Assembly: GCA_002269645.1 (NCBI GenBank)
Contig: NIVC01000575.1
Span: 310,001 to 374,000 of the forward strand
DNA from: Macrostomum lignano
Taxonomy: Eukaryota
Length of the DNA stretch: 64,000 bases
Direction: 5' to 3'
A program made the position numbers and the translations under genes. Shown one piece after another: positions 6,262-34,637 of this stretch. Each line of letters starts with the position of its first letter. Within the stretch, counting starts at the first letter, position 1. The notes beneath the pieces are model-generated. The model made no database searches and was not told where the DNA came from. It saw only the letters and a list, made by a program, of their open reading frames with translations.

Positions 6262-6655
<394 letters not shown>

Positions 6656-6869
6656 TGTTACATCCGACTTCCGTTACCAACTCGAAGTCCAGGTGAATTA
6701 TGGTTAGTAATCTCAAGCTTGGTAGCGGGCTCTTGCCATGCCGATGTTAACATTCATTTCCTTTATATTTGCTCTCCTTATATTAGCTTTAGAACGCAGG
6801 GTTAACAGGGGCAGTGTCTATGGCCAATATGTGTGAAATGAAATATACTTTATATACGCATATACCACA
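6656..6869 (-). repeat. 3' LTR (214 bp)
   Basis: Direct repeat of 11029-11242, preceded on the minus strand by the PPT. Confidence 0.96.
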
Positions 6870-9900: not shown

Positions 9901-10999
9901 AAGGTGTGAGGACCAAGGTCGTGCCGCGCGGTTTAACTCGGATCAGTTCCGCTGTCGATTTGTTTACAATTGTGCGCTCGGCGCCGGTGTCCACTTCGAA
10001 TTTAATCGGAGACCCGTTGACTTGCAGTGTCTCTGTGAAAGGCTTGAACCGAGCCTTCTGTGCGCTCATTCGCTTAGCCTCGTAATTTGAATTGACAGCG
10101 ACGTTCTTGACGTCAGAGAAATCGTACGACTCCTCACTACTGCCGGGGCTTCCATTTGCGCTCAGATGCTTTATTTTCCTACCTTTGTAGCTCTGCTTGG
10201 GTTCGAACTTCTTCTTGCTGTGCGGCGGTTGGTTTCCGCTGAACTGCTTCTGCTTCGTCCTGCACGCCTTCTCAACATGACCTGGTTTATTGCATCGACT
10301 GCAGACATACGATCTTTTGGGACAGCTTCTCGCCCAGTGCCCAGAAGAGAGGCACCTGTAGCACCGGTCGTCTGAACTGGCCGGATTCGTCGGTCCCGAT
10401 CCCTTAGCAGATGATCTTCCATGTACCGCATTGGCCTGAGCCAGGCCGACAATGTCTCTTCCAGTGTGGATCTGCATTGCACCCTTCTCTGCGATTTCGA
10501 TTGCTGTCGAGATTTTAACTGCGTCGTCCAGTGAAACATCGTCCTCCTGCAGCAGCCTTTGCTGTGTCAGCTTGCTTCGTAGTCCACAAACCAGTCTGTC
10601 TCTGATCGCCTCCGACAAAAAGCCTCCAAACGAACAGGTCGCCGCCAACTTCCGTAGCTGCGCGACGTACTCTGCAATGGATTCGCCTTCCTGCTGGCTT
10701 CGGTGATGAAAGTTGTATCTCTCGACGATTCTTTTCGGCGTTGGGGTGAAATGCGTTCGTAACTTTTCAATTAAATCATCGTAGGATTTGTCCTTCGGGG
10801 AGTCTGGAGACAGTAAGTCTCTGAGCAACGTATAGCAGTCTTCACCAATTACTGTGATGAGCTCGGCTCGCTTAATCTCCTCTTTGGTGATGGATTTAGC
10901 GATGAAGTACTGTTCCAGACGCTCCTCGTATACAGTCCACCTTTCAGGTCGTGCCGGATCAAATGTGCTGATTTTCGAAGCAGTATTTGGCGCGGTCAT
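6947..10999 (-). CDS. Gag-Pol polyprotein (1350 aa): Gag with two CCHC knuckles, aspartic protease, RT, RNase H, integrase
   Basis: ATG at 10999 just after the PBS. Motifs: CYRCLSSGHWARSC and CSRCNKPGHVEKAC; FEVDTGA; RT FVDD; RNase H DASCYGVGAVL; integrase HEGHPG..CKGC, LHLDF, SDNG, NGLAERMV; C-terminal GESVLV..W..G..RHVDHI module. No stop or frameshift. Confidence 0.96.
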   Translation of the reverse strand: MTAPNTASKISTFDPARPERWTVYEERLEQYFIAKSITKEEIKRAELITVIGEDCYTLLRDLLSPDSPKDKSYDDLIEKLRTHFTPTPKRIVERYNFHHRSQQEGESIAEYVAQLRKLAATCSFGGFLSEAIRDRLVCGLRSKLTQQRLLQEDDVSLDDAVKISTAIEIAEKGAMQIHTGRDIVGLAQANAVHGRSSAKGSGPTNPASSDDRCYRCLSSGHWARSCPKRSYVCSRCNKPGHVEKACRTKQKQFSGNQPPHSKKKFEPKQSYKGRKIKHLSANGSPGSSEESYDFSDVKNVAVNSNYEAKRMSAQKARFKPFTETLQVNGSPIKFEVDTGAERTIVNKSTAELIRVKPRGTTLVLTPFSNEQIPLLGEAVVQVVIGDIATELQVVVTDGTKQNLLGRDWITQLDPLARKYAGEASAVGILSLDADHELKTILEENSELFSDSLGKIKHYTARLDLKENTTPKFCKARPVPFALKPAIEQELKSLENQDIIRKVKTSDYASPIVPVLKKDGKSIRICADHKRTINPALEVDIYPLGKPDELFTRLSGGKFFTKLDISQAFLQLELQEECRKYTTINTHMGLYEYNRLVMGLASSSAQFQEAMDKILSDTDAICFVDDIVISAASQSEHNKKLRNVLVLLKNHGIKLNKSKCEFMMREIEFLGHVIDENGVHQSPRIMRAIAEAPRPTNTPEVRSLVGLINYYRKFIRGLSDILAPLNALLQKDAEFIWSNECERAFVACKSALTSTQVLVHYDPDKPLVVHTDASCYGVGAVLSHIMSDSDEKPICYASRGLSKAEKNYSQIEKEGLAIVFAVKKFHQYLYGRRFILVTDHKPLVTIFGPKNNIPSIAASRLQRWAVILSAYQFEIRYRRTDEHGNADALSRLPLENTKSTEDGVFQNRIEAQPIDHGELKRATAMDENLSRVLRYCRFGWPEHSKQELQPYHSRRNELSVEDGVIFWGIRMLIPASLKQQLLQLLHEGHPGIVGMKSLARLHVWYPGIDKDIETALTKCKGCQAQRNLPPQAPLQPLLWPEKAWTRLHLDFFGPCYGFMWLVVVDATTKWVEIYPMRSATAHGTITKLQETFARYGYPRQILSDNGSQFTAEEFKNYLRSCRITQILTSVGHPRSNGLAERMVQTAKRALRAGMKDSHDALGCLNAFLARYRVTPHSTTGKTPSEMMLKYSPRTKLSHLHQDTEQRVAEKQEQQKQQHDKGASKVAREFEPGESVLVLDFRKQGEDKWAVGEILKRRAQLSYLVKVGRMVWKRHVDHITSTGLQTESKAALSHELLEQLIGKGNNESQAINSGGGETTKTRCAETAQARRHRYKHEDVPLTQTRLRPRAAT

Positions 11000-11014
11000 T
11001 TTGTCTTCTGAAGA

Positions 11015-11027
11015 ATCCTCGTCGCCA
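11015..11027 (-). promoter_or_regulatory. Primer-binding site TGGCGACGAGGAT (matches the 3' end of tRNA-Ser GCU)
   Basis: 1 nt downstream of the 5' LTR; complementary to ...AUCCUCGUCGCCA, the tRNA-Ser(GCU) 3' end as recalled. Confidence 0.8.
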
Positions 11028-11028
11028 A

Positions 11029-11241
11029 TGTTACATCCGACTTTCGTTACCAACTCGAAGTCCAGGTGAATTATGGTTAGTAATCTCAAGCTTGGTAGCG
11101 GGCTCTTGCCATGCCGATGTTAACATTCATTTCCTTTATATTTGCTCTCCTTATATTAGCTTTAGAACGCAGGGTTAACAGGGGCAGTGTCTATGGCCAA
11201 TGTGTGTGAAATGAAATATACTTTATATACGCATATACCAC

Positions 11242-11242
<1 letters not shown>
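11029..11242 (-). repeat. 5' LTR (214 bp)
   Basis: Direct repeat of 6656-6869. Confidence 0.96.
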
Positions 11243-11543
<301 letters not shown>

Positions 11544-13196: not shown

Positions 13197-16100
13197 ATAA
13201 ATGAAGACACAAACAGACAGACGAATGAAGCCACTGACGGATGAATGAAGCCACAGACAGATGAATGAAGCCACAGAAAGATGATGAATGAAGCCACAGA
13301 AAGATGAATGAAGCCACTGACAGATGAATGAAGCCACAGACAGGTGAGTGAAGCCACAGACAGATGAATGAAGCCACTGACGGATGAATGAAGCCACTGA
13401 CGGATGAATGAAGCCACTGACAGATGAATGAAGCCACTGACGGATGAATGAAGCCACTGACAGATGAATGAAGCCACTGACGGATGAATAAAGCCACAGA
13501 CAGATGAATGAAGCCACAGACAGATGAATGAAGCCACTGACGGATGAATGAAGCCACAGACAGATAAATGAAGCCACAGACAGATGAATGAAGCCACAGA
13601 CAGATGAATGAAGCCACAGACAGATAAATAAAGCCACAGACAGATGAATGAAGCCACAGACAGATAAATGAAGCCACTGACAGATGAATGAAGCCACAGA
13701 AAGATGAATGAAGCCACTGACGGATGAATGAAGCCACAGGCAGATGAATGAAGCCACTGACGGATGAATGAAGCCACTGACGGATGAATGAAGCCACTGA
13801 CGGATGAATGAAGCCACAGGCAGATGAATGAAGCCACAGAAAGATGAATGAAGCCACAGACAGATAATTGAAGCCACAGACAGACAGATGAATAAAGCCG
13901 CAGACAGATAACTGAAGCCACAGACAGACAGATGAATGAAGCCACTGACGGATGAATGAAGCCACAGGCAGATGAATGAAGCCACAGAAAGATGAATGAA
14001 GCCACAGACAGATGAATAAAGCCGCAGACAGATAACTGAAGCCACAGACAGGCAGATGAATGAAGCCACAGAAAGATGAATGAAGCCACTGACGGATGAA
14101 TGAAGCCACAGGCAGATGAATGAAGCCACTGACGGATGAATGAAGCCACAGGCAGATGAATGAAGCCACAGAAAGATGAATGAAGCCACTGACAGATGAA
14201 TGAAGCCACTGACGGATGAATGAAGCCACTGACAGATGAATGAAGCCACTGACAGATGAATGAAGCCACAGGCAGATGAATGAAGCCACTGACGGATGAA
14301 TGAAGCCACTGACGGATGAATGAAGCCACTGACGGATGAATGAAGCCTCAGGCAGATGAATGAAGCCACAGAAAGATGAATGAAGCCACTGACGGATGAA
14401 TGAAGCCACAGGCAGATGAATGAAGCCACTGACAGATGAATGAAGCCACAGAAAGATGAATGAAGCCACTGACAGATGAATGAAGCCACTGACGGATGAA
14501 TGAAGCCACTGACAGATGAATGAAGCCACTGACAGATGAATGAAGCCACAGGCAGATGAATGAAGCCACTGACGGATGAATGAAGCCACTGACGGATGAA
14601 TGAAGCCACTGACGGATGAATGAAGCCACAGGCAGATGAATGAAGCCACAGAAAGATGAATGAAGCCACTGACGGATGAATGAAGCCACTGACGGATGAA
14701 TGAAGCCACTGACAGATGAATGAAGCCACTGACAGATGAATGAAGCCACTGACAGATGAATGAAGCCACTGACGGATGAATGAAGCCACAGGCAGATGAA
14801 TGAAGCCACAGAAAGATGAATGAAGCCACAGAAAGATGAATGAAGCCACAGACAGATGAATGAAGCCACAGAAAGATGAATGAAGCCACAGAAAGATGAA
14901 TGAAGCCACAGACAGATGAATGAAGCCACAGAAAGATGAATGAAGCCACTGACAGATGAATGAAGCCACTGACGGATGAATGAAGCCACTGACAGATGAA
15001 TGAAGCCACTGACAGATGAATGAAGCCACTGACGGATGAATGAAGCCACAGGCAGATGAATGAAGCCACAGGCAGATGAATGAAGCCACAGAAAGATGAA
15101 TGAAGCCACAGAAAGATGAATGAAGCCACAGACAGATGAATGAAGCCACAGAAAGATGAATGAAGCCACAGAAAGATGAATGAAGCCACTGACAGATGAA
15201 TGAAGCCACTGACAGATGAATGAAGCCACAGAAAGATGAATGAAGCCACTGACAGATGAATGAAGCCACTGACGGATGAATGAAGCCACTGACAGATGAA
15301 TGAAGCCACTGACAGATGAATGAAGCCACTGACAGATGAATGAAGCCACAGAAAGATGAATGAAGCCACAGACAGATGAATGAAGCCACAGAAAGATGAA
15401 TGAAGCCACAGAAAGATGAATGAAGCCACTGACAGATGAATGAAGCCACTGACAGATGAATGAAGCCACTGACAGATGAATGAAGCCACTGACAGATGAA
15501 TGAAGCCACAGAAAGATGAATGAAGCCACAGACAGATGAATGAAGCCACAGAAAGATGAATGAAGCCACAGAAAGATGAATGAAGCCACTGACAGATGAA
15601 TGAAGCCACAGAAAGATGAATGAAGCCACTGACAGATGAATGAAGCCACTGACAGATGAATGAAGCCACTGACAGATGAATGAAGCCACTGACAGATGAA
15701 TGAAGCCACTGACGGATGAATGAAGCCACTGACAGATGAATGAAGCCACTGACGGATGAATGAAGCCACTGACGGATGAATGAAGCCACAGGCAGATGAA
15801 TGAAGCCACAGAAAGATGAATGAAGCCACAGAAAGATGAATGAAGCCACAGACAGATGAATGAAGCCACAGAAAGATGAATGAAGCCACAGAAAGATGAA
15901 TGAAGCCACAGACAGATGAATGAAGCCACAGAAAGATGAATGAAGCCACAGAAAGATGAATGAAGCCACAGAAAGATGAATGAAGCCACAGAAAGATGAA
16001 TGAAGCCACAGAAAGATGAATAAAGCCGCAGACAGATAATTGAAGCCACAGACAGACAGATGAATGAAGCCACAGACAGGTGAATGAAGCCACAGACAGG
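13197..16100. repeat. 2.9-kb 20-bp minisatellite (TGAAGCCACWGRMRGATGAA)
   Basis: Period 20, about 145 copies with five main variants; it explains the long repetitive minus-strand ORFs. Confidence 0.97.
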
Positions 16101-16675
16101 TGACTTTTTGCAATTCGGGAACACACCTACCTCAGAAGTATCTACGGTTGTATTCTTCCTCAAAGTTTCAAATTGCCTCATAATGGCTTTATTCCGTCGT
16201 AAGCGCTTGTGATGTGGGTGATTTGTGTTTAGCAAAATAGGAAAATATGGAAACAAGGTTTGCCATGTGATTTCGTATCACCCTACTTAGAAGTAATCAT
16301 GGCAGAAAAAAAATTATGCTGGTCAGTATATTCTCTGACAAATTAAAAAAGGTCAGGACAGCATAGAAAAAATTCAATCTAAAATGGAGAGTACAGTTGC
16401 AATGATTTGATTTATATTTTATAAGTTGATTGCAGAAAACAAGATTTTGATTTCAAGGTTAAGATTAAAAAAGATTGTTAAAGTTAGCTCTGCGTAGGGG
16501 TCCCAAATACCGGAGGTTCCTCAATACCGGGATAGGCTAACAGATGAAAAAAGTAAAAATATGACCGATAAATATACTCATGATTCATTTTTCTTCTGCC
16601 GCATGATTCAGAGAACTTTCCTTTATTGCAGTCATCAATCATTGTAGCAAAACAGTAACAACCAGCACAAAACTC

Positions 16676-17386
16676 TCACTCACTCACCCACTCACTCACT
16701 CACTCACTCACTCACTCACTCACTCACTCACTCATTCACTCACTCACTCACTCATTCACTCATTCACTCACTCACTCACTCATTCACTCACTCACTCACT
16801 CATTCACTCACTCACTCACTCACTCACTCACTCACTCACTCACCCACTCACTCACTCACTCACTCATTCACTCACTCACTCACTCACTCACTCACTCATT
16901 CACTCACTCACTCACTCACTCACCCACTCACTCACTCACTCACTCACTCATTCACTCACTCACTCACTCACTCACTCACTCACTCACTCACTCACTCACT
17001 CACTCACTCATTCACTCACTTACTCACTCACTCACTCACTCACTCACTCACTCACCCACTCACTCACTCACTCACTCACTCACTCACTCACTCACTCACT
17101 CACTCACTCACCCACTCACCCACTCACTCACTCACTCACTCACTCACTCACTCACTCACTCACTCACTTACTCACTCACTCACTCACCCACTCACTCACT
17201 CACTCACTCACTCACTCACTCACTCACTCACTCACTCACTCACTCACTCACTCACTCACTCACTCACTCACCCACTCACTCACTCACTCACTCACTCACT
17301 CACACACTCACTCACTCACTCACTCACTCACTCATTCACTCACTCACTCATTCACTCACTCACTCACTCATTCACTCACTCACTCA
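16676..17386. repeat. (CACT)n microsatellite
   Basis: Direct reading, with CATT/CACC variants. Confidence 0.96.
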
Positions 17387-18589
17387 TGATTGTAAGAATC
17401 AAAAGCAATACCAATACATATCTTATTTAGTAGTTATCTAAATATGCTAAATCTCTAAGTATAATACTAACAATGAAAATCAAATACAAATTGGATATGC
17501 AATTATTTCACATAAAACTATAAAAAATGAAAAAAATTGCCGTTGACAAGTTACCAATCATGCGCATCGGGATCCCGGAAGTTACAAAAAGTTCCCAAAT
17601 TGCAAAAATGTTTCTTCAAAACTAATAGTTTGATATCTAAGCTGTCCTAAATTTAGATACTCAACCAAGTCTATGACAGGGAATCTACTAGAGCCCCGGC
17701 TAACAGACAAAAAAGTGATGTCTATTTTAGTGGAAGCAAATCCGAAAAATCCGCACAGAAATGGGATTGTACTTGAGTGTAGAGGAGCTTAAAAGGCAGC
17801 CAGACAGCTACTCTACAAAAACGTATCCTTCCGGACCTTCCTCCACCGCAGCAGCAATGGCAGCCGCCGAGAGTCGAGCTCCGACAGTGTACTGTCTCTC
17901 CGATTTTGCTCGTTCCGATACAATGTTAAATTCTGAAAAAAGCAATTGTTTTTAGTTCAAATTTGATTTGTTTGACCCATTGATACTAGAAACATAATAT
18001 AGCATTGTCGGTAGAGTTTACGGTAGTTTATTTTCAAGTGAGACTAAAGCATTCCTGCATGGTTAAACTCATTGTTGCACTATTTGGTCAAACGACAATG
18101 CTTTTCCACTTGCTGGTTGCCCTCTATATGCTCGTATGTGTATTCTTATTATTAGAGAAAAAATACTTTCATACGTCGTAAAATGCATTCCATCAAATAT
18201 ACAGATGAAATGTGCGTGACACCCTTGGAATGTAGCCAACCCCACAGAACTTTGAATCATTTCCAATAGGTGCTTATTGTAACAGGATATAAATGTGTAA
18301 AAGCGTGCATTAAACTTAAAAAGCATGCATGCTTAAATGGCTCATGATCGTATATTGGCTAGTCATATAAAATACGATTGCTCATTTTATCGTTAAAAAT
18401 TGTACTATTCTGAGCCGGGAATGTGTTATCTATGGTAATTTTGACAAAAACTAGGATATGTATGAGATATTCTATGGGTTTGAGGTCGGTATGTGATTAA
18501 ATCCCGAGAGCCGAAGCCGATGTATTCAGATAAATCCCGGAGCCATACTTGTATGTCTATGGTTGAAGTTGGGGATGGGGGTGTGCGGG

Positions 18590-19091
18590 CGAAGCCCCTG
18601 CTGGGGATGTGGGGGCGAAGCCCCTGCTGGGGATGTGGGGGCAAAGCCCCTGCTGGGGATGTGGGGGCAAAGCCCCTGCTGGGGATGTGGGGGCAAAGCC
18701 CCTGCTGGGGATGTGGGGGCAAAGCCCCTGCTGGGGATGTGGGGGCAAAGCCCCTGCTGGGGATGTGGGGCAAAGCCCCTGCTGGGGATGTGGGGGCAAA
18801 GCCCCTGCTGGGGATGTGGGGGCAAAGCCCCTGCTGGGGATGTGGGGCAAAGCCCCTGCTGGGGATGTGGGGGCAAAGCCCCTGCTGGGGATGTGGGGGC
18901 AAAGCCCCTGCTGGGGATGTGGGGGCAAAGCCCCTGCTGGGGATGTGGGGGCAAAGCCCCTGCTGGGGATGTGGGGGCAAAGCCCCTGCTGGGGATGTGG
19001 GGGCAAAGCCCCTGCTGGGGATGTGGGGGCAAAGCCCCTGCTGGGGATGTGGGGGCAAAGCCCCTGCTGGGGATGTGGGGGCAAAGCCCCC
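18590..19091. repeat. 26-bp GC-rich minisatellite (GTGGGGGCAAAGCCCCTGCTGGGGAT)
   Basis: Period 26 (some 25), about 19 copies; each unit has a GGGGC-AAA-GCCCC hairpin. Confidence 0.95.
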
Positions 19092-19100
19092 ACATTCTTA

Positions 19101-19362
19101 CCATAGACAAAATTTCATTAAGAAATTTCTTGAGTCACGAAGGAAGAGAAGCGAGAAGCTCGCTTATTTAGATACATACAAAAATCCTTGCAAAATGTCC
19201 GGGAAAGTGATCGATTAAATCCCGCAAAATAAAATCTATGTCAATAAACCTCCCTGAAAGTGAGCTTTAAAGTGGTTTAATGTATCATATAATCCTCCTC
19301 GAAATCAGGAGCAATCGAAGTTCATATATGATAAACGCTGTTTGATTCATCATAGTCTATGG
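19101..19362. mobile_element. Possible 262-bp MITE
   Basis: 8-bp inverted ends CCATAGAC/GTCTATGG flanked by TTA on both sides; short enough to be chance. Confidence 0.3.
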
Positions 19363-19479
19363 TTAGAATGTCCTTCGGAATGTGAATTAAACGGCGTTTA
19401 TTATTTGCTTAATGCACTAGAAATATATATCCTGATTGCAATATCGCTTTTGACAATCCAAATGGGAATTTGGACAACC

Positions 19480-20480
19480 AAAACGGGACGCCATAGACAT
19501 TCAATTCAAGCCAGGCCACAGGCTCGGACAGCTTGGGAATACGCAACCATAGCATGTGGAATTGACAATCAAAACGGGACGCCATAGACATTCAATTCAA
19601 GCCAGGCCACAGACTCGGGCTGCTTGGGAATACGCAACCATAGCATGTGGAATTGACAATCAAAACGGGACGCCATAGACATTCAATTCAAGCCAGGCCA
19701 CAGGCTCGGGCTGCTTGGGAATACACAACCATATCATGTGGAATTGACAATCAAAACGGGACGCCATAGACATTCAATTCAAGCCAGGCCACAGGCTCGG
19801 GCTGCTTGGGAATACGCAACCATAGCATGTGGAATTGACAATCAAAACGGGACGCCATAGACATTCAATTCAAGCCAGGCCACAGACTCGGGCTGCTTGG
19901 GAATACGCAACCATAGCATGTGGAATTGACAATCAAAACGGGACGCCATAGACATTCAATTCAAGCCAGGCCACAGGCTCGGGCTGCTTGGGAATACACA
20001 ACCATATCATGTGGAATTGACAATCAAAACGGGACGCCATAGACATTCAATTCAAGCCAGGCCACAGGCTCGGGCTGCTTGGGAATACGCAACCATAGCA
20101 TGTGGAATTGACAATCAAAACGGGACGCCATAGACATTCAATTCAAGCCAGGCCACAGACTCGGGCTGCTTGGGAATACGCAACCATAGCATGTGGAATT
20201 GACAATCAAAACGGGACGCCATAGACATTCAATTCAAGCCAGGCCACAGACTCGGGCTGCTTGGGAATACACAACCATATCATGTGGAATTGACAATCAA
20301 AACGGGACGCCATAGACATTCAATTCAAGCCAGGCCACAGACTCGGGCTGCTTGGGAATACACAACCATATCATGTGGAATTGACAATCAAAACGGGACG
20401 CCATAGACATTCAATTCAAGCCAGGCCACAGACTCGGGCTGCTTGGGAATACACAACCATAGCATGTGGAATTGACAATC
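19480..20480. repeat. 91-bp tandem repeat, 11 copies, derived from the inverted-repeat arm
   Basis: Unit starts at 19480, 19571, 19662 and so on; half of the unit is present once, inverted, in the other arm. Confidence 0.95.
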
Positions 20481-20569
20481 AAAATGGGAAAAAAGCCATT
20501 GAAAACGGGAATTCGCCTAATTTAATGTATTTTTATATCTCAGGGCCACTGGAATATTTAAAAGTGAAG

Positions 20570-20885
20570 AACAAGGTGAACATGCGGCTTCTTGGGAAAG
20601 CGCTCGGTCAGCAGTTCAGACATTTCCTTGAGCGTCAGGAAAGGATTTTCATCGAGTTTCTCAACCAAGAATTCTCTCATTTCCTGATCGGCCTTGCACA
20701 ATCCTTATTTACGACCACCGCGAGGAAGGGATTCCACTTTGCCATCAAGTCAAAAGTTGGCAGCGATTCGGAATGCCGTTTTTTTCTTGATTTACAAGAT
20801 TCTTGCAGCTTCCTGCGATGGATGACCCTTGTTCAATCGCATCAATCAGCCGCTGGCGATCTGCTACAGGAATTGGTGGCGCCAT
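20570..20885 (-). pseudogene. Tc1/mariner-type transposase N-terminal HTH relic
   Basis: Manual translation with one frameshift and 3 stops: MAPPIPVADRQRLIDAIEQGSSI/EAARIL*IKKKTAFRIAANF*LDGKVESLPRGGRK*...MREFLVEKLDENPFLTLKEMSELLTERFP. This is a paired-like HTH with a GRPR-like linker; the DDE domain is missing. Confidence 0.7.
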
Positions 20886-21721
20886 TCAATGGGGTCGCTT
20901 TCAGGCCAAAGACGAACAAACAGGGGAGAGAGGGACAGAGAGCTGTAAAATCTCAGTCCGATTCCCGTTTAATTTGAATGGCTTTTTCCCACACTGAATG
21001 TTCAAATTTATAGCCTATGGCCTAGCCTCCCTCAGTAGACTTTGCTAAACTGCTTAAGTCCATGACTAGGGTGAGATCTGTGGCCTGGCTTGAATGTCTA
21101 TGGCGTCCCGTTTTGATTGCCCAAATTCCCATTCCGATCGTCAAAAGCGATGATATTTGGTCACGAGTGCCATAGACATTTAAGCACTCAAAACCAAGTG
21201 TTGAATCCTAATATTAAATAACAATCAGCAAAAAAATTAATTTAATTTGGTTCACAAATATATCCAAAAAACTCCAAACAGATGCCTATTTGAAAGTAGT
21301 TTAATCCCGAAATAGGCGAGACGCCCATCTACGGTTTCTAGTATCTTTATGGTTTGATCTGATTAACTAAATTAATTTGATTAATCAGACCTTTCCGAAT
21401 GGTGCTTAGGTGATCATGAAACTCCACGTCTGTTTTCTTGCCATGAAGCTTATGCTTCTCCCTCAGAAAAAAGGCCATCAAAGCTTCGCCAGTTGGTATG
21501 GGTCGCAAGAACAGAAACAACTGTGGGATTCGCTCCTTGGCTAGGACCGTGTTGCAGCCTGCTCCGACGATGCGCCCGTTTCCATCAATTCTTATCCACC
21601 AGGCTAGGTGCAGTACGTCGCTACTTGTCTCCCTCTCGTCCTTGAAATTACCATTGTTAAAAAATATATATGCATTAAAATTTTCTTTTTCATAATCTTT
21701 AAAGTCAATCATTTTTAAAAC

Positions 21722-24700
21722 TTAAATGGCATCTTTTCTTACCTTGTAGAAGATAAATCGACAATTATTTTTTCGTCCCTCGACGTGCACAAATTGCTGA
21801 GAAGCGTCAATGCACCTCGGATCTTTTTTGAGAGCCAGATCTCGAATACTGACAAGTTTTTTTCGCAGCTCCCATTCTTCTTTTGCGTTTCGTGGAACCA
21901 CATGGCCGGGCTTGTCAGAAAAGATGTGAGACCAGTTTCCTTCATCATTCAAAAACTGGTCGTTTTTAGATGTTCTGGGTTGGTTGTCAGCAGAGCTGGT
22001 AGCGCCTTCATTGTCACGGCCTGAACGTCCGCCCAGCTCTGAGTCAGAGGAACTCTCCATTTCGGGAAACTTATTCCCAAGAAGTTCGTTTACAGTCCAT
22101 AAATCTAAACTGTCAAAAGTCCGCGTGGAGGCGAACTGTTTGCTATTCAGTTCGCCGAGAATCAGAAATGATACTACCTTGTGAACGGTGCTTCCCGGGG
22201 GAAACTCCATACGAAAACTGGAATGCACTGATTTGGGATTCAGTAAGACACCGCCGTATACTGTCGATCGTGTTGTTGCGTCCGAACTAGCGCTCAGCAC
22301 TGCGGGTGCCCAATCACAATCGGATATCTTCTGTTGCCTCTGATGCAAGCTACTATTTAACTTATGCAGTATCTTGCTGTTCCAGTCCCTAAATTCTCTT
22401 CTCTTCGAGTCAATCAAATCTTGAATTTGTTGCCTAACATCCGCAGCAGAGCGTGATGGCAGACTGTCAGCCAACAGGTACTGGAGCGTTCTGACATCTC
22501 GCCTACGCAAGGCACGGACAGTCTCGGTCTTATTTAAGTTTAGTTGGCTTAGCAATTGATCAGCGGCCAGATTGCAACAATCATAGTGGCTTGCACCAGG
22601 GATTGATTCAGCTCGATCCAGTGTCTCTAGAACATTTTTCGCCATCTCATAACTCTTTTCCATTCTAACAGCTCGTTCGTGATCAAGAATTTGCTCTACT
22701 TGCTCCTGGCGAACGGTCATTGCTCCGAGGCTTTGGTGCATGGCCTTAATAATCAGGCAGAGTTTCGGAATCTTTGTTAGCTCTTTTAGTCTTTCAAACT
22801 CGGGAAAGAATCTACCCAAGCTGGGAAGGGCCTCCGTCATGTCCTTTGCGAACTGATTCTCTGGAGAATCTTCATCATCAGTCTCAGCGTCCTGGTGTTC
22901 GCCACCCATTGAAGCTACCATCCTGTGCGTTTTGACTTCCAAGCGAACCTTTCCAAACACGAACTCAATCGTGTCAGGTGTTTCCTCCACTTTCATCTCC
23001 ATGTCTGTGGCTGCAATCCAGAATCTGCTGCAGCGAGATCTTTGCCCACCTCTTTCGCTTAGAGGTCTCAACAGCCAGCGCAGCTGATCTGGCAGTCCAG
23101 CGAACAGACCCCTACCGTTAAGCAATGGTCTCCGATCGAACGGTGGCTTCCTGCAGATCTCTAATCCGGAACTGAATTGCTTCATGATGTAGTCCGTGTT
23201 GAAAAGAGTGTCTAGGAGTGGAGTTCCTTTAAGCAGATCTGGTTGGCTACTCCAGTACTTTTGAAACGGGTGGAATCGAGCTTCGTGAAGATTGGCGGGC
23301 TTGTCAAGGCTAAAAGCCACACCCGGATGATCCATTAGCAGACCAGTCAGCACATCGAAATCGCTGACAAGATTCCCTTTGCTGCCCACGACAGAAATTT
23401 GAAACGTATTTTTGTTAAAAATGACCTTGTCAATGCTCAAATACGTGTTTCCGCATCCTGAAAAATCAAGTGTCTGATTTGGTACAAGCCAACCGTCCTC
23501 TGGAACGTCAAGATAGCATGGATTTATCAGGGCGGCTACGTTGTTAAAGTCCAGATTCTGCTCTCTAAGCATCTCACGTGCAGTTAAGAGCTCAAGCTGG
23601 CGTGTCTCACTTTCAGTGAATGCAGAGCTGCTGATGCTGTATTCCAAGCTCTGGTAAGCTATGATACTCTTCGGTAGTTCAAGAAAATAGGAATTTTCTG
23701 GCTGAGACAACCCACAGAGAAGCTGACCTGCGCACTTTTTGAGCACATTTGAAAATACCAGCGACTCAGACGGACGAACCAGAGGCAGCGACACAAATGG
23801 TGAGAAACGACCAGTGAAGGCTACTATCTCAAGAATCGAAATGAGCCGTTCAACATCATCTGGTCGTCCAACTTTCGTAGCCGCATCTCTCAGCAAGGCG
23901 AAAGCGTGTCTCGAAACATAGTTTAACAAAGCTGAATCGGAAAAGTTGTTGAGACAAATGCTCACTGAAGCGATCCCGATTTCAAACATGGCTTCTTTGA
24001 GCGCAAATCTCTGGTAGAGCGACTCCTCTATTTCCAGAGCGCGTAGAAGAAGAGCTACACACTCAAGAAAACAGGCGAGGACCTCAGCAAGCGTTTCGCA
24101 AGCCATGGCAAGGTCCAGCGCGCTCATTGCCGCTTGCAGTGGCGTCATTTGGCTCTTTTCGAGTCTTCTGGAGATAGCGATCTCGCTCTTCTTCAACGCT
24201 TGCACGCTGTGTCCCGGTACGTAAATACCTGGGAATAGTGGGACTTGTGCTTTGGCTGGTGTTTCCGACGAAGCAGTCTGACGACTGAACATTCCCTGGC
24301 AGTCTGACCATGGGTTATCGATTAAATGGAACAGCGCATGAACCGGAAATGTCCCACAAAGAGCTCCGAATCTAGAGACAATACGCATTACAGATGATAT
24401 CAAATCTGAGTGGTAGAAGACAGAGTATCCTTCGAGCACTGCTTTTGTGAGGTCCTTCATACCTCTGAGTTGAGCTGTTACATCACCTGAACAGCTGAGG
24501 ATCCCTGCACCTCTCAGAAATAGACCTACAATTCTTGACTCAAGTTTCGCTTTAGCAAGTGCTTCGTCAGCCAGCTTAGCTGACTTGCTAGCCTGGCGTA
24601 GCAGCAACCTGTCTCTCGGTGACTGTGAGAACGCAATGTGAATCGAGTTGTTCAGATCGGCCGAGTCAACTATCAGCTTTAGCCGGGCTTCTTCTTGTGT

Positions 24701-26108
24701 TAAAAAAGATCGAAAATTTTCATTACTTTCCAAGGCAGACTCTCCATTTTCTACCAAGAGTAACAGCAAGCGCAGCTCTTGGTCAGGATCTTTTTCTTCT
24801 GAAATTTCCAGTACGAGCTCAGTTTGACGGCGCTGCAGTGACTCAATGTCACGCTCATTGCGTTGAGACTTCTGTAGAGCTAGCCACAGCGCCGAAGCAG
24901 CAAGAAAAAGTTTTGTAGTGAGAGCGATTGAAGAATCGAATGTTGCTTCGACCACAGACTTAGGCTGATTTATCTTCAGATTGTACATCATTCTTTCGAT
25001 ACTTGCAATTCCTGTCGCCACGTAGGAAGCTACAAATCCTGTTTGAGGCGTCGCTGCCAACTCCTCCCACAACTGCAGTCTCTTCTTGGACTCAAGCTTA
25101 GAGCATGTGAGACACACAGGTCTGAACTCGTGACAGGCTCCTGCGACAAGGAAGCATTTTCGTTCGGATAAATCTTTCTCGGCACTGCATACCACACAAC
25201 GAGCACCGAGGAAAAACTTCTTTATACCCCTTCTCTCTCTATTAACGTCGACGCGAAACTTGGGTAGCACATCTTTGAGTCTTTGGCGCATCTTTTCGGG
25301 GTCGCTTGACAGTGGCTTGGAGCCAGATGGAGGAATCAATATCACCATGAGTTTTCTCAATTCGCTTTCCTTCAAGCTGGAAAGGTCATAGCAGCATACT
25401 AGTTCGCCTTCTTGAACTGGTGGAACTTTCGTCTGCGTATTCCTTTTCAGCGTTTTTTCTAGCGTCTCTCTCGCCCATTTGCAGGCTTCGGTGAGAACTT
25501 CATCGTCTAAATGTTCTTCTGAAAGCTCGTCTGACGCGATACTCTCAATAAAAACCGGGCTTTGCAGAGTTGACCGTCTCGTCCTCTTAATAACCCGTAG
25601 CTTCTCCTGAAGATCCAGAACTGCTTGACGAGTTTCCTCGAAAAACTTATTTGCGAATCCGTTTGGGTCGCATTGCGCTCCATGAGCCGTCTCGGAACTC
25701 TCCCTCCAAGCAGCGATTCTGCTCATGAGGTCCTTCGATAGTGTCTTTCCAGTTGGCAATCGAGGCAAATCAGCGCCACTCTCGTAATCCTCAGTTGCTT
25801 CATCTCGACGTTCGTCGTACTTCATTCGTTCGGTTTTATCGCACAGGACAGATTTGGCTTGATTCAGAAGCTTGGCCATGTCTTCAGCCTCGCTGCCAGC
25901 CTTGTCGGGATGATAGTTCGTCATTCGCTTGCGCCAAGCTCTCAGAATTTCCGCCTCGGAAGCAGCTTGCGTCACACCCAGTAGCTGGCAAAAAATTGTT
26001 ATTGTGAATATTATTACGGCTAATATTGCGTCATTAATACAACTGAGACTTAGTGGTGTTAAAAAAGTCACTCACCGAGTAAAAACTTGGTAAATCTGAG
26101 TTGGCCAT
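21722..26108 (-). CDS. Large J-domain (DnaJ class C) multidomain protein, about 1431 aa; exons 26108-26076 and 25984-21722
   Basis: Exon 1 MANSDLPSFYS is spliced (GTGAGT...TTTTTGCCAG, 91-nt intron) to LLGVTQAASEAEILRAWRKRMTNYHPDK, restoring a canonical J-domain with HPD. Exon 2 is a 4.26-kb non-repetitive open frame. Confidence 0.88.
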
Positions 26109-29530: not shown

Positions 29531-32175
29531 ATAACCACCATTGTCCTCTCTGAAGGAATGTATAGAATGCCCACGCGTCATATGTGAATGTCCCCCGGGA
29601 AACGAATCTTGGCCTAGCTATAATTTATAAAAAAGTAAAAAGTACATTTTTCTATTTATTTCGTATCACACTAATAATGAGTAATCAATGCAGAAGAAAA
29701 CTAGCAAACCCGAGAGAGTTCGAATTATATACTTCCTACTTTGTAGAACTTTTTAACATCAATTAAAGAAACTTCTGTTTTCCGTCATTTATACTGTATG
29801 AGCTCATTCTAACTGGAGTTATGATCCCTTTTCTAAAATTCTAGATAAATGTACGCCTTTGAAACAAAACCTTTCCGCATCTCGCTGAAGTACTGATCAA
29901 AGTTACCTCTCTGTGCTCTAAATGAAATATTATACTTCGCTCTCAAAAGAAAGGCGATTAATTTCTCCTGGTAAAGCTTCTCCAGTTGGAAGGGATCGCA
30001 ACAGCAGAAATAATTCGGCAGTTCGTTCCGCGGCGAAGGGTCGTGTGTGTTGCACCACCTCACAAATGAAGCGACCGTTTCTATCAGTTCTTATTCACTA
30101 CGATAGGCACAGTGATCTTCCTTGTAATTTTTTATTGTAATTAAATTTTTGCACATTTTACTTTATGCTTTTCCAGTCTGGTACAAATATCAGTATTATG
30201 TTTTGTTAAGACTAAGACGTATAAAAACTTCGAGTATTTAAGTTTACAACAACATGCATTTTTCTTTTCGAAAGAAGATAAATTTGAGAATTTAACGTTT
30301 ATATAAGGTATATACCTTTTTATATATTGACTGATTGGTATGGCCTATCGGGCATCTCAGTATAGGTTGCCTAATAATATCATTCTATTCCATAAAAAAA
30401 TCCGAATTGTAAAATGATATGTTTTTTAATTTTTCGGCTAGGGCCTAGTCTGTCTAGCATTTGTTTTAGTGTATATAGACATAACATTATTCTTTCATAT
30501 TATACAATTAAATTTCACTTTTGTGGTTTTTTATACTATATAAAATTCTAACTTGGCCTTATCCTAATTCCTAGGTCTATAAAAAGATAAATAATCTAAA
30601 CTAAATATTCATTTATATCTATAGAGTATAGGGTATTACTAATACCTATAGACATCATTTTTTATTATTGTTTCCATATAACATATTATATCAAATGGTC
30701 AAGGCTTTAAAAATAATAAATCCAATTATATATACTATACTATTTTGGATATGTATTAGTGTATAGTATTAGGGCTTCAACAAGCTGTTGAAGCCCGCAG
30801 ATTTTGAACCCAGGGAACTCCAATCCCCAGAACTATTTTTGCATGTATTCTAAAATCTGAGGTAAAACTCAGAAAAAACTTATTAATAGTTAGGATAGAG
30901 TTGAATATAAAATAGAGTACATTTGTATAAAATTAGGATTTGAGACAAACATTGATATTGTTGGCTGGTATTCTGCGCAGAATGTCAAGCAAACTCTGGC
31001 CTCTACCTCTGCCTTTCCCTATGTCCCTTGCATCCTTTGAATGAAACTTCTATTTTCTCTTCTATTCCCTCTCTTCTCTCTCATCTCTTGTCTCATCTCT
31101 TTCCTCTCCTCTCTTCTTTCTTCTCTCATCTCTTCTTTCTCCCCTCTATTCTTTTCTTTCTCCTCTCCTTTCTCCTTTCTCCTCTCTTCTCTCAACTCTC
31201 TCTTTTCCTCTCTCCACTCACTCCTCAAATCTCTTCTATTATCTCTTTCCTTACCTCTCTCTTCTCTCTCATCTTTGTTCTCTTATCTCTCTTTTCTCTT
31301 TTATCTTTTCTCTCTTATCTCTTCTCATTTCTCTCTGCTTACTCCTCTCTCTCTTTCTCTCTTGTCTCATATCTTTTCTCCTCTCTAATCTTTCCACTTG
31401 TCCTGAAGAAGAATACAATAATTTTGAAATATCCGCAATTCAATTAAACTGACTTTGTTCAGTCCTTTCTACTGTTACCATGTCAGTGCCTGAGATTGGA
31501 GGTGCCCTCCTCTCTCCCTCTCTCTCTGCCTCTCTCTCTTCTGTCTAATCTCTTTTCTCCTCTCCAATCTCTCCCCTCTTTCCTCTCCTCTCTTGTCCTT
31601 TCCCCTCTTTCCCCTGTCCTCTTGATTCTCTCCCCCCTCCTCTCTCCTCACTCACTTCTCTCTCATCTCTTATTTCTTATCTTTCCTCTTTCCTCTCTAC
31701 TCTCCCATCCCTCATCTGTTCACTCTCGTTTCTGCTATCTCATCTCCCCTATCGCCTCAGAGCCCTATCGCCTGACCCTTTGTCTGGGCTGGGGGAATGA
31801 GTGAGAGTGAGTGAGCGGCATAAACAACAGAAAAAGCAGACAAACTTCACATGCTTACAGTTTCTGTTCTGATTAAGATACAGAGTTGAAACTTTACATT
31901 TAGACAAAGAATAAGTCAATGAAGAATTGTGTCAAGTTTGAAGTCAATCGCTTTATGTGGAGCAAACTTATAGCAGCTGAAAAATAGTCAATTTTCAAAC
32001 CCATTTTCCACATCTCGCCAGATAAGGGGAAAGAGAGGCAGGCAGAGGTTGGGGTGGCTGTCTCGCTGACAAAAACAGCCTAAATTTAAAAGTGCACAGT
32101 GCCGTTGAGGATTAAATTTCAGACTTGAAACTTCACACGATTGTGTCAAAATAGTTAAAGATTATTTGTGTCAAA

Positions 32176-33143: not shown

Positions 33144-34637
33144 ATGTCCTTACTGGAGACCTATGAGCAGCAGTTTGGCATAACAACAGCCGAGATAACT
33201 AGTAAAATTAACCAGATTAGTCACCTATCAAGTACAGGTGAGGTCACTTTACATAAATAAATAAGATATATTGTCTGCTATTCTTGTGTCCAAAAATCAA
33301 TAACTTACTATTTTTGTGTATCTATAGATGACCGAGTGACCACTATTAGCCAAGCAGAGCGGCTGTTTGCCGAGGCCAAGGAGACCCTGGAACAGCTGGA
33401 GCTGGAGATACGAAGCCAGCCACCATCGCTCAGGCAGAAGTACACCACCCGGCTGCAGAGCTATTCCGCCGAGCACAAGAAACTGGAGGTGGATTTTCGT
33501 CGGGCTAGGTAAATGGGGCCCACACCCTACTCACTGATCCTCTGGGTGCTGCCGCTCTACTCACAGATCCTCCCGATCTCCCAGATCCCAGTTTGACCCA
33601 TCAATCCTCCCAGAACACTATTGGTTTTCCAATGGTTCCAGATCTCCATATTAATCTCCAAATCCTCTCAGATCCCTATCTTAATCTCCAATCCTCTCGA
33701 ATCCCTATCTTGATCCCACAACTCTCCCTGACCCCTAATCCTCTCAGATCCCCAATCTTAATCTCCAATCCTCCCAGATCCCCATCTTGGTTTCCCAATC
33801 CTCCCAGATCACCATCTTGGTTTCCCAATCCTCCCAGATCACAATCTTGGTTTCCCAATCCTCCTAGATCCCCATTTTGGTTTCCCAATCCTCCTAGATC
33901 CCCATTTTGGTTTCCCAATCCTACTAGATCCCCATTTTGGTTTCCCAATCCTCCCAGATCCCCATCTTCGTTTCCCAATCCTCCCAGATCCTCATCTTGG
34001 TTTCCCAATCCTCCCAGATCCCCATCTTCGTTTCCCAATCCTCCCAGATCCTCATCTTGGTTTCCCAATCCTCCCAGATCCTCATCTTGGTTTCCAAATC
34101 CTCCCAGGTCTTCATCTTGGTCCCTCGCCACTCCTAGAGCTCATCTGGGTTACGAATCCTCCCAGATCCACTGATTTATCCCCAATCCTCATTTGAACTG
34201 CCAGAGAGGCCGGCCAGGCCAAGCGGGATCGAGACGAGCTTCTGTCGGAGGCCGAACAGTCGCTGCAGCATCGCCACGACGAGCTGGCCTCCGACTACCG
34301 CACCCGCCTGCTGGACAATACCGAACGTCTCGAACGTGCCGGTCGTCGTATCGACGAAGGCCTTGGCAGTGTTGAAACAACTCAACAAGTTGGCCGGACC
34401 ATTCTGGCCGATCTGGCCGGGCAGCGGGAGACGCTGGAGCGCGGCCGAGACCGGCTACGCGGCGCCGATAGGGATCTGGGCGCCAGCAGTCGGATACTGA
34501 GCGGCATGCTGCGCAGGGTGGTGCAGAATCGGGCTCTGCTGCTGCTCATACTGGCCGTTGTGCTCATTGTTATTGGCCTGGCTGTTTACACCGTGGCCAG
34601 GGCCAACTTGTCTGGGCGGACGGCCGCGGCCGGATGA
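33144..34637 (+). CDS. vti1a: Vesicle transport Qb-SNARE Vti1a (235 aa); exons 33144-33237, 33328-33508, 34205-34637
   Basis: MSLLETYEQQFGITTAEITSKI.. Habc domain, SNARE motif RLLDNTERLERAGRRID..QRETLE..RDRL, and a C-terminal TM helix. All junctions are GT-AG and phase-compatible. Confidence 0.93.
33720..34130. repeat. 30-bp minisatellite in vti1a intron 2 (CCCATCTTGGTTTCCCAATCCTCCCAGATC)
   Basis: Period 30, about 13 copies. Confidence 0.92.

What the first reader, a model, noticed from the sequence alone, without database searches (positions are those of the whole stretch)
21722..26108. Unannotated-type 1431-aa J-domain protein: J domain + Cys cluster + helical body + DUF1598-like core + short terminal domain
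Seen: an N-terminal J-domain with HPD; a Cys cluster RCVVC..RKC..CHEFRPVCLTCSK (FYVE-like spacing, degenerate); about 500 aa of helical sequence; then a block TLFNTDYIMKQFSSGLE..RFWI..NQFAKDMT..LGRFFPEFERLKEL. From memory, DYxMKxxxxGLE resembles the ADYRMKLIGIGLE motif of the largely bacterial DUF1598 family. Inference: an Hsp70-coupled multidomain protein with a prokaryote-related core, possibly an innate-defence effector or a horizontally acquired gene. This is the best candidate for an undescribed system in the window.
Basis: partly seen in the sequence, partly recalled or inferred. Interest (0 to 1): 0.75.

Follow-up and report, generated by a model that had tools for sequence, protein, structure and literature searches.

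The report
Flatworm J-protein with DUF1598-like core
This flatworm gene encodes a large Hsp70 co-chaperone from an unnamed protein family found in animals and one giant virus; its conserved core proves to be a distant relative of the bacterial DUF1598 family, and its last domain is swapped between family members (nuclease, kinase, or here a new small domain).

Summary
The window is Macrostomum lignano DNA. The ORF is gene BOX15_Mlig017921g3 on the minus strand.

The true product is 1549 aa from four exons, not 1431 aa.

Domain order:
- J domain with HPD.
- A decayed FYVE finger. Relatives carry intact FYVE.
- A TPR-like helical solenoid.
- An alpha/beta core.
- A low-complexity linker.
- A small C-terminal domain.

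At least 421 cluster representatives share the body. Named ones come from Hydra and two sponges, and a Tupanvirus protein has the same fold. Neither Pfam nor any paper I could find describes the body.

I fetched genuine bacterial DUF1598 proteins. Profile-profile comparison shows the core is homologous to them (95.6% probability, E 1e-8; reversed control P 0.45).

Function is unknown in both groups. The C-terminal position is swappable: GIY-YIG nuclease, alpha-kinase, or here a new W-x-H-[IV]-F…K-x-G-H domain.

My best guess is an Hsp70-coupled scaffold that carries an effector, possibly for defence. That is inference. Recent gene transfer into the flatworm is not supported.

The parts
17808..26108 (-). 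Whole gene (CDS span), four exons: 26108-26076, 25984-21743, 21640-21391, 17932-17808 (stop 17810-17808). All three introns are GT..AG.
   Evidence: The spliced translation equals P0001 (BOX15_Mlig017921g3, 1549 aa) exactly. The public record NIVC01000575.1 gives the same span.
25814..26108 (-). J domain (aa 1-68), HPD at aa 35-37, interrupted by intron 1 (26075-25985).
   Evidence: Pfam PF00226, E 5.3e-15, above the gathering cut-off. PDB J-domain hits to 1e-7.
25100..25201 (-). Degenerate FYVE-type zinc finger (aa 273-306). Six Cys and one His remain; a deletion of about 16 aa removes the middle ligands.
   Evidence: It aligns column for column with the Pfam-positive FYVE domains of family members. 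There is no Pfam FYVE hit in this protein itself.
23525..24202 (-). TPR-like alpha-helical solenoid (aa 606-831), the first half of the family-wide conserved body (aa 595-1275 = 22193-24235).
   Evidence: AlphaFold model, pLDDT 84 and pTM 0.74, helices H12-H237 of the model. Foldseek gives only weak helical-repeat/TPR matches.
22721..23440 (-). DUF1598-homologous alpha/beta core (aa 860-1099). It includes FSLDKP, FHPFQ, TDYIMKQFSSGLE (23197-23159), SRFWI, NQFAKDMT and FPEFERLKEL.
   Evidence: hhalign against bacterial DUF1598 proteins: 95.6% probability, E 1.2e-8, 219 columns. Reversed control P 0.45. Larger alignments give 96.3%, E 1.5e-9. Family-invariant residues are retained.
22334..22720 (-). 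Long helical insertion within the core (aa 1100-1228).
   Evidence: AlphaFold secondary structure, helices 510-634 of the model. This part is poorly conserved and variable in length across the family.
22172..22318 (-). Closing strands of the core (aa 1234-1282): CDWAPA ... VYGGVLLNP.
   Evidence: W1236, P1238, Y1254, G1255, G1256 and V1257 are invariant or nearly so. The stretch aligns collinearly with the bacterial 'P.GGGV.I.P' motif, though the score is weak on its own (E 0.08).
21458..21952 (-). C-terminal domain (aa 1356-1486): W1362-x-H1364-I-F ... K1369-x-G-H1372, a helix, then the strands WWIRIDGNGRIVGAG and a helical extension. It is split by intron 2 (21742-21641).
   Evidence: A profile built from six family tails hits P0001 at 1e-27 and also finds P0010 and P0013. 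In the window the profile matches both exon 2 and exon 3. In the AlphaFold model the core of the domain has pLDDT 75-90. No Pfam, PDB, PADLOC or PHROGs match.

Best explanation
Shown:
- This is an intact four-exon M. lignano gene for a 1549-aa class-C J-domain protein.
- It belongs to a large, unnamed family found in eukaryotes (and, by fold, in a giant virus).
- The family plan is: J domain, FYVE-type zinc finger, TPR-like solenoid, alpha/beta core, flexible low-complexity linker, then a variable C-terminal domain.
- The core is a remote homologue of bacterial DUF1598 proteins. Those carry N-terminal hydrophobic, signal-like stretches, so they are probably secreted.
- The flatworm protein keeps nearly all residues that are invariant across the family.
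- Its FYVE finger has decayed.
- Its C-terminal domain is a new small alpha+beta domain with conserved His/Lys/His. About nine of 180 sampled relatives share it.

Inferred:
- The J domain recruits cytosolic Hsp70 and triggers its ATPase.
- The solenoid plus the DUF1598-like core is the conserved working part. It may be an enzyme or a specific ligand binder, because about 15 polar residues are invariant and several are shared with the bacterial family.
- The C-terminal domain is an exchangeable effector that the scaffold positions or releases. In relatives it is a GIY-YIG nuclease or an alpha-kinase.
- I guess that the His/Lys/His domain here is a hydrolase, possibly a nuclease.
- The most likely biological setting is a conflict or defence role rather than core housekeeping.
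- Members with an intact FYVE probably act on PI3P endosomal membranes. The flatworm protein probably does not.
For: - Gene model and identity.
- J domain.
- Family size: 421 representatives at E<=1e-3, 82 at E<=1e-30.
- Architecture counts: DnaJ in 15/29, FYVE in 15/29, GIY-YIG in 9/29 and alpha-kinase in 1/29.
- Domain order J, FYVE, body, GIY-YIG is seen on a contig. The order J, FYVE, body, alpha-kinase is seen in P0034.
- Named members: Hydra, Amphimedon, Corticium.
- The body fold matches a Tupanvirus J-domain protein: E 6e-31, TM 0.71.
- Body model: pLDDT 84.
- DUF1598 homology.
- Invariant residues kept.
- Tails fall into at least 9 sequence clusters plus 19 singletons, while the body is conserved.
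- Tail domain family.
- Tandem paralogues in one genome.
Against: - No biochemical function is known for DUF1598 or for the eukaryotic body.
- Foldseek found no solved structure resembling the core or the tail. The enzyme/binder and nuclease guesses therefore rest on conservation patterns and on position in the protein only.
- The tail model is of moderate quality (mean pLDDT 59). Its best matches are weak NTF2-like folds (E about 0.07), which are not nucleases.
- Only two near-identical copies (P0001 and P0002) were seen in M. lignano. This is not the expansion typical of immune genes.
- J plus FYVE also fits ordinary endosomal trafficking.
- No expression or infection data were available.
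Confidence: 0.5

Rival explanations
1. A housekeeping endosomal or membrane-trafficking co-chaperone. J plus FYVE would target Hsp70 to PI3P membranes to remodel a coat or complex, as auxilin or RME-8/DNAJC13 do. The body would be a cargo or coat adaptor, and the tail a regulatory add-on.
For: J plus FYVE architecture in half of the sampled members. Canonical RRHHCR FYVE motifs in some. A TPR-like adaptor-type solenoid. The body is strongly conserved from sponges to flatworm.
Against: Most members, including this one, lack the PI3P-binding motif. The distribution is patchy, with no named orthologue in well-studied animals. Nuclease and kinase domains are exchanged at the C-terminus. One case of tandem paralogues. 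A giant-virus copy.
Confidence: 0.28
2. A gene recently transferred from bacteria (or assembly contamination) into M. lignano.
For: The core is homologous to a bacterial family. Most of the coding sequence is one long exon.
Against: Three GT..AG introns, one of them inside the J domain. The contig also carries a V-SNARE gene and an LTR retrotransposon. Identity to DUF1598 proteins is only about 17-20%, against 25-39% to eukaryotic relatives that share the whole architecture. The one 'bacterial' genome hit is a split, eukaryote-type gene, 51% identical to the query P0004; P0004's other relatives include named sponge proteins. It is therefore probably host contamination of a MAG.
Confidence: 0.03
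3. A protein carried by, or derived from, a selfish mobile element. GIY-YIG domains are typical of homing endonucleases and Penelope-like elements, and the family is multicopy in some genomes.
For: GIY-YIG tails in about 30% of members. Tandem copies in one genome. A relic exon copy 3.8 kb upstream. Few introns.
Against: No reverse transcriptase, transposase or terminal repeats around the gene. J and FYVE domains are not transposon parts. The flatworm copy has no GIY-YIG.
Confidence: 0.07
4. A decaying gene: the FYVE deletion and the relic exon suggest a locus on its way to being lost.
For: Degenerate FYVE finger. A frameshifted copy of exon 3 nearby.
Against: A 1549-codon frame is open with intact splice sites. 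41 of the 45 positions that are at least 90% conserved across the family are kept. A 97-98% identical second copy is also open.
Confidence: 0.04

Closest known systems
DUF1598 (Pfam PF07643) proteins of bacteria. These are about 450 aa, with N-terminal hydrophobic stretches typical of signal peptides and a C-terminal WWWD. From memory, the Pfam family was described from Rhodopirellula/Planctomycetes.
   Same: The alpha/beta core is homologous (hhalign 95.6-96.3%, E 1e-8 to 1e-9). Shared collinear motifs: S[IL]D.P; T..L..L...DY.[LM]K....G.E; R[FW][WY][IF]; F...[LF]T..Y; P.[FY]A.LR.L; GGV.
   Different: Pfam's 84-residue model does not detect the eukaryotic proteins at E <= 10 for this protein's segments or at E <= 0.1 to 1 for the relatives scanned. 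Identity is about 17-20%. The eukaryotic form has no signal peptide and no WWWD end. It carries a 130-aa helical insertion and is embedded between J/FYVE/TPR-like modules and an effector tail. Function is unknown in both.
Tupanvirus soda lake 'J domain-containing protein' (UniProt A0A6N1NXY0)
   Same: The whole 690-aa body has the same predicted fold (Foldseek E 5.8e-31, TM 0.71, 21% identity), and the protein is named as carrying a J domain.
   Different: It is encoded by a giant virus of amoebae. I did not examine its termini, and a scan of IMG/VR found no further viral copies.
Class-C J-domain proteins that join a J domain to a nuclease-like end domain, e.g. sacsin (J + HEPN) (from established knowledge)
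   Same: A very large protein in which a J domain is combined with a small terminal domain of nuclease-like type. Presumably Hsp70 is recruited to whatever the body binds.
   Different: No sequence or fold relation of the body. In sacsin the J domain is near the C-terminus. The tail here is neither HEPN nor any recognised nuclease fold.
FYVE-domain endosomal proteins (Hrs, EEA1, Vps27) and endosomal J-proteins (RME-8/DNAJC13, auxilin)
   Same: Relatives carry Pfam-positive FYVE fingers, and the family profile matches Hrs and Vps27 FYVE structures. The pairing of a J domain with a membrane-targeting module is also shared.
   Different: The flatworm finger has lost three or four zinc ligands and the PI3P-binding motif. 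The rest of the protein is unrelated.

Membership tests
J-domain protein, class C (DNAJC type) | J domain scoring above Pfam's gathering threshold | tested here: met
   PF00226, 55.7 bits against a cut-off of 27.8, aa 9-68.
J-domain protein, class C (DNAJC type) | HPD tripeptide between helices II and III | tested here: met
   ...TNYHPDKAGS... at aa 35-37, read directly from the sequence.
J-domain protein, class C (DNAJC type) | No G/F-rich region, DnaJ zinc-finger or DnaJ C-terminal domains (these would make it class A or B) | tested here: met
   No other DnaJ-related Pfam hits at E <= 1.
J-domain protein, class C (DNAJC type) | Stimulates Hsp70 ATPase | not testable with these tools
   Needs a biochemical assay.
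   All full-length relatives are 'uncharacterized', 'hypothetical' or 'J domain-containing protein'. Beyond the J domain no Pfam or PDB sequence match exists.
FYVE zinc finger (PF01363) | Eight zinc-binding Cys in the FYVE spacing, and a Pfam hit | tested here: not met
   Six Cys plus one His. A deletion of about 16 aa removes the middle ligands. No Pfam hit in this protein. It is homologous by position to true FYVE fingers of relatives.
FYVE zinc finger (PF01363) | PI3P-binding motifs WxxD, (R/K)(R/K)HHCR and RVC | tested here: not met
   SERKCF replaces RRHHCR. Only three of the 30 aligned relatives keep the canonical motif.
DUF1598 (PF07643) | Hit to the Pfam model above its gathering score | tested here: not met
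   No hit at E <= 10 for the protein segments. No hit in 29 family members at E <= 0.1, nor in 7 more at E <= 1.
DUF1598 (PF07643) | Profile-profile homology to verified DUF1598 proteins | tested here: met
   Verified bacterial proteins score PF07643 at 8e-22 to 1e-30. hhalign gives 95.6% and E 1.2e-8, or 96.3% and E 1.5e-9 with larger alignments. Reversed control P 0.45.
DUF1598 (PF07643) | Signature motif [AT]DY.[LM]K....G.E | tested here: met
   TDYIMKQFSSGLE at aa 941-953. D942 and K946 are invariant (over 98%) and G951 is 90% conserved in the eukaryotic family. DYRMKL.G.GLE is invariant in 30 bacterial sequences, which were selected by that motif.
DUF1598 (PF07643) | Bacterial architecture: N-terminal signal peptide, about 450 aa, C-terminal WWWD | tested here: not met
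   The flatworm protein starts with a cytosolic J domain and has no WWWD. It is a remote eukaryotic homologue, not a member in the Pfam sense.
GIY-YIG nuclease tail (as in about 30% of family members) | PF01541 hit or GIY...YIG motifs at the C-terminus | tested here: not met
   Absent here. The W-x-H-[IV]-F...K-x-G-H domain takes its place.
Unnamed J-FYVE-body family (defined here) | Conserved body of about 680 aa with the family-invariant residues | tested here: met
   The family profile hits the window ORF at E 9e-207. 41 of the 45 positions that are at least 90% conserved are identical in this protein.

The most novel reading that the evidence does not exclude
An ancient, so far undescribed family of Hsp70-dependent effector proteins, spread patchily across early-branching animals, probably protists, and giant viruses. 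In this reading a DUF1598-type module that shares ancestry with a bacterial family, probably of secreted proteins, acts as the sensor or enzyme. Exchangeable 'warheads' (GIY-YIG nuclease, alpha-kinase, and the new His/Lys/His domain) are attached through a flexible linker. This would be a eukaryotic innate-immunity or conflict system of a new design. It would also give DUF1598 its first functional context.
Probability: 0.25. Interest if true: 0.85.

Novelty: new variant of a known kind. Interest (0 to 1): 0.66.

Why it matters
J-domain proteins decide where Hsp70 acts, so each new architecture points to a new Hsp70-driven process. This one has three notable features:
- A conserved body of about 680 aa is absent from Pfam, from solved structures and from the literature I could search.
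- That body now links to a bacterial domain of unknown function (DUF1598).
- A swappable end domain, including nucleases and a kinase, resembles the layout of immune and conflict proteins.

The family occurs in sponges, Hydra, a flatworm that is a tractable laboratory model with RNAi, and a giant virus. Its function can therefore be tested directly. A result would annotate hundreds of eukaryotic proteins and a widespread bacterial family at the same time.

Tried and rejected
- Pfam, NCBIfam, PADLOC and PHROGs scans of the core, tail and helical segments found nothing beyond DnaJ.
- The word-indexed protein search returned only the two M. lignano proteins, for both the single sequence and the family profile. 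The exhaustive HMMER search was needed to find the family.
- PDB sequence searches with the protein and with the full-length family profile gave only J and FYVE hits; the body and DUF1598 profiles gave nothing significant.
- Foldseek against the PDB gave no match at E <= 1e-3 for either model. The body gave only helical-repeat noise; the tail gave weak NTF2-like matches that I do not trust.
- The IMG/VR scan for viral relatives found none.
- The GTDB scan gave one hit, which I read as sponge contamination of a bacterial MAG and not as a bacterial homologue.
- The gene neighbourhoods of bacterial DUF1598 genes held only housekeeping neighbours (DNA polymerase III alpha, EF-P, EpmB-like, a glycerate-kinase-like protein, named from reading the sequences). 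No functional operon emerged.
- I looked for repeats bounding the gene, as a test for a mobile element. Only satellites in the last intron turned up.
- A search for a second body copy next to the relic exon at 29.9-30.1 kb found none.
- Literature searches for DUF1598, PF07643, J+FYVE+GIY-YIG, Mlig017921 and Tupanvirus plus J domain each returned zero papers.
- P0002's locus was not on record, so no dN/dS between the two flatworm copies could be computed.
Full report
**What is at the coordinates**

The window is Macrostomum lignano (free-living flatworm) DNA. The translated ORF is 100% identical to 'hypothetical protein BOX15_Mlig017921g3' (P0001, 1549 aa) on contig NIVC01000575.1 of GCA_002269645.1.

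The gene lies on the minus strand:
- Exon 1 (26108-26076) encodes MANSDLPSFYS.
- A GTGAGT..CAG intron follows.
- Exon 2 starts at 25984.

That stop sits six codons into a 102-nt GTAAGA..AAG intron (21742-21641).

The annotated product continues in two more exons:
- Exon 3: 21640-21391.
- A 3.4-kb GT..AG intron full of satellites.
- Exon 4: 17932-17808.

Joining the four exons reproduces P0001 exactly.

Independent support for splicing intron 2 comes from the C-terminal domain. It is conserved in relatives and straddles the intron. A profile built from relatives matches the end of exon 2 (profile positions 2-74) and the exon 3 ORF (positions 70-98).

**Domains, checked one by one**

1. J domain. 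Pfam DnaJ, E 5e-15, aa 9-68, with HPD.

2. Cys cluster, aa 273-306.
   - In an alignment with 29 relatives it occupies the columns of their FYVE fingers. Of 29 members scanned, 15 are Pfam-positive, down to E 9e-18.
   - The flatworm protein has a deletion of about 16 aa that removes the middle zinc ligands. It also lacks the RRHHCR motif.
   - 'FYVE-like, degenerate' is therefore correct.

3. Body.
   - The AlphaFold model of aa 595-1285, built with a 14-sequence alignment, is good (pLDDT 84, pTM 0.74).
   - It shows a TPR-like helical solenoid (aa 606-831), then an alpha/beta core (aa 858-1045).
   - The core is closed by strands at aa 1236-1282, after a long helical insertion.

4. Tail. After a low-complexity linker comes a small alpha+beta domain, aa 1356-1486.

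**The family**

The word-indexed search found only the two M. lignano proteins. An exhaustive HMMER search of 1.84 billion cluster representatives found 421 relatives at E <= 1e-3 and 82 at E <= 1e-30. Most are 1300-2200 aa and match aa 595-1275.

The few that carry names are 'uncharacterized' proteins of Hydra vulgaris, Amphimedon queenslandica and Corticium candelabrum.

Of 29 members scanned against Pfam:

| Domain | Members |
|---|---|
| DnaJ | 15 |
| FYVE | 15 |
| GIY-YIG nuclease | 9 |
| Alpha-kinase | 1 |

Domain order:
- J, FYVE, body, GIY-YIG on one contig.
- J (36-103), FYVE (305-367), body, alpha-kinase (1745-1943) in P0034.

The body has no Pfam family, no sequence match in the PDB and no Foldseek match in the PDB at E <= 1e-3.

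Against predicted viral structures, the whole body matches one protein: a 'J domain-containing protein' of Tupanvirus soda lake (E 5.8e-31, TM 0.71, 21% identity).

Literature searches for the architecture, for DUF1598/PF07643 and for the gene name returned nothing.

**The DUF1598 claim**

Direct Pfam scans are negative. There is no PF07643 hit at E <= 10 for this protein's segments. There is none in 29 relatives at E <= 0.1, nor in 7 more at E <= 1.

- Find bacterial carriers. A metagenome scan with the back-translated pattern DY.MKL[IV]G[IV]GLE hit more than 120 contigs. The ORFs are mostly 240-670 aa (one of 905). They have hydrophobic, signal-like N-termini and end in WWWD.
- Confirm their identity. 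Three of them score PF07643 at 8e-22 to 1e-30. The memory was accurate.
- Compare profiles. An alignment of 30 diverse bacterial sequences against the eukaryotic body alignment gives hhalign probability 95.6%, E 1.2e-8, over 219 columns.
- Control. Reversing the bacterial alignment gives P 0.45. Larger alignments (172 eukaryotic, 94 bacterial) give 96.3%, E 1.5e-9. A collinear second segment pairs YGGV.L.P with GGGV.I.P.

Shared motifs, in order:

| Eukaryotic family | Bacterial DUF1598 |
|---|---|
| FSLD.P | SIDP |
| GT..L.TLF.TDYLLK.FS.G.E | THFAQVLVEADYRMKLIGIGLE |
| HRFWI | RWYF |
| F...LT..Y | F...FT..Y |
| FP.FARL.EL | PVYA.LRNL |
| GGV | GGV |

The core is thus a genuine remote homologue of DUF1598 proteins. 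It is not a member in the Pfam sense. Pfam's 84-residue model covers only the first third of the shared region.

The bacterial genes sit among housekeeping neighbours and give no functional clue.

**Origin**

Recent transfer into the flatworm is not supported:
- The gene has three spliceosomal introns.
- Its neighbours are eukaryotic: a V-SNARE gene and an LTR retrotransposon.
- The same multi-domain plan exists in sponges and cnidarians.
- Identity to bacteria is only about 17-20%.

One hit turned up among 185,579 prokaryotic species genomes. It is a split, FYVE-containing, eukaryote-type gene, 51% identical to the query P0004, whose other relatives include named sponge proteins. It lies on a contig labelled 'MAG: Stappiaceae bacterium'. 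I read this as host contamination.

The eukaryotic and bacterial families therefore share an old common origin. The direction of transfer is unknown.

**The terminal domain**

The tail profile is H-x-W-x-H-[VI]-F-x-x-K-x-G-H-V-x-P, a helix, then strands ending W[VI]R[VI]..G.I.SAG.

- Besides the two flatworm proteins, it is found in P0005, P0010, P0013, P0017, P0021, P0038 and P0060. It is always C-terminal, usually after a Gly-rich linker.
- In A4, F1366, K1369, G1371 and H1372 are invariant. H1364 is a glutamine in one sequence.
- The AlphaFold model is confident only for the roughly 100-aa core.
- Foldseek gives nothing better than weak NTF2-like matches (E about 0.07).
- Pfam, NCBIfam (this protein's tail only), PADLOC and PHROGs are silent.

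Across about 130 sampled tails there are at least nine sequence clusters and 19 singletons, while the body stays conserved. The C-terminal position is therefore a swappable slot. This domain occupies the place that a GIY-YIG nuclease or an alpha-kinase holds in relatives.

**How it most likely works**

Shown: the anatomy and the homologies described above.

Established knowledge: an HPD J domain recruits Hsp70 and triggers its ATPase; canonical FYVE binds PI3P on endosomes.

Inferred:
- The solenoid plus the DUF1598-like core is the conserved working module. About 15 polar residues are invariant across the family (D888, H916, T937, D942, K946, R963, R998, D1043, T1061, R1076, E1079, K1082, Y1254 and others). 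All are retained here, and several are shared with bacteria. This points to an active site or a specific ligand pocket.
- The C-terminal domain is an effector held on a flexible tether.
- Hsp70 action may remodel, activate or release the assembly.
- The swappable nuclease and kinase ends, the patchy distribution, one tandem pair of paralogues and a giant-virus copy suggest a conflict or defence role.

I put this package at about 0.5 overall. The anatomy and homology are about 0.9. The defence setting is about 0.3-0.35. The nuclease guess for this tail is about 0.25.

The main rival is an ordinary endosomal co-chaperone (about 0.28).

**Verdict**

This is a real and correctly spotted oddity. 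The HGT reading fails, and the defence reading remains open.

It is a new architecture within the known class of J-domain co-chaperones. It is built on an undescribed conserved body that gives the bacterial DUF1598 family its first eukaryotic relatives.

Noticed in passing
window 29866-30094 (-): A frameshifted relic copy of exon 3 of the J-protein gene. It is 50% and 35% aa-identical in two frames and keeps the same ...CGGAAAG|gt donor. It lies 3.8 kb upstream of the gene, and there is no matching body copy anywhere in the window.
   Followed up: partly
window 6947-11089 (-), flanks 6262-6656 and 11242-11543: A 1380-aa gag-pol ORF of a Ty3/gypsy-type LTR retrotransposon (zinc knuckle, protease, RT, RNase H, integrase motifs are readable). 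It is flanked on both sides by segments that carry (AGTA)n arrays and the same short ORF start, probably the LTRs.
   Followed up: partly
window 13213-16103, 16675-17386, 18576-19090, 19473-20489: Satellite arrays: 144 copies of a 20-bp unit, (CTCA)n, 20 copies of a 26-bp unit, and 11 copies of a 91-bp unit. The last two lie inside the 3.4-kb last intron of the J-protein gene. They explain the many long 'ORFs' in all frames there.
   Followed up: partly
window about 33156-34637 (+): The upstream neighbour is an annotated V-SNARE (Vti1-like; PF05008/PF12352) gene on the opposite strand. It is a trafficking gene next to a J/FYVE-type gene, which is probably coincidence.
   Followed up: no
L001 (OZ219963.1, 'MAG: Stappiaceae bacterium', 99190-107349): A contig filed under a bacterial MAG carries a eukaryote-type family member, with the FYVE part in a separate ORF and Ser/Gly-rich low complexity. 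It is 51% identical to P0004, whose relatives include named sponge proteins. This is probably sponge host DNA binned into a symbiont genome.
   Followed up: partly
L123 10001-15503 and 20326-20619: In an unnamed ENA assembly, a FYVE-body-GIY-YIG gene (no DnaJ piece was called on it) is followed about 5 kb downstream by the DnaJ start of what may be a second family gene, which would make them tandem paralogues.
   Followed up: no
L003-L122 (metagenome contigs): Bacterial DUF1598 proteins are conserved over about 420 aa, far beyond Pfam's 84-residue model. They end in an invariant WWWD and have hydrophobic, signal-like N-termini. Recurrent neighbours are DNA polymerase III alpha, EF-P and an EpmB-like protein (named from reading the sequences), so the synteny is housekeeping and no operon partner is evident.
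   Followed up: partly
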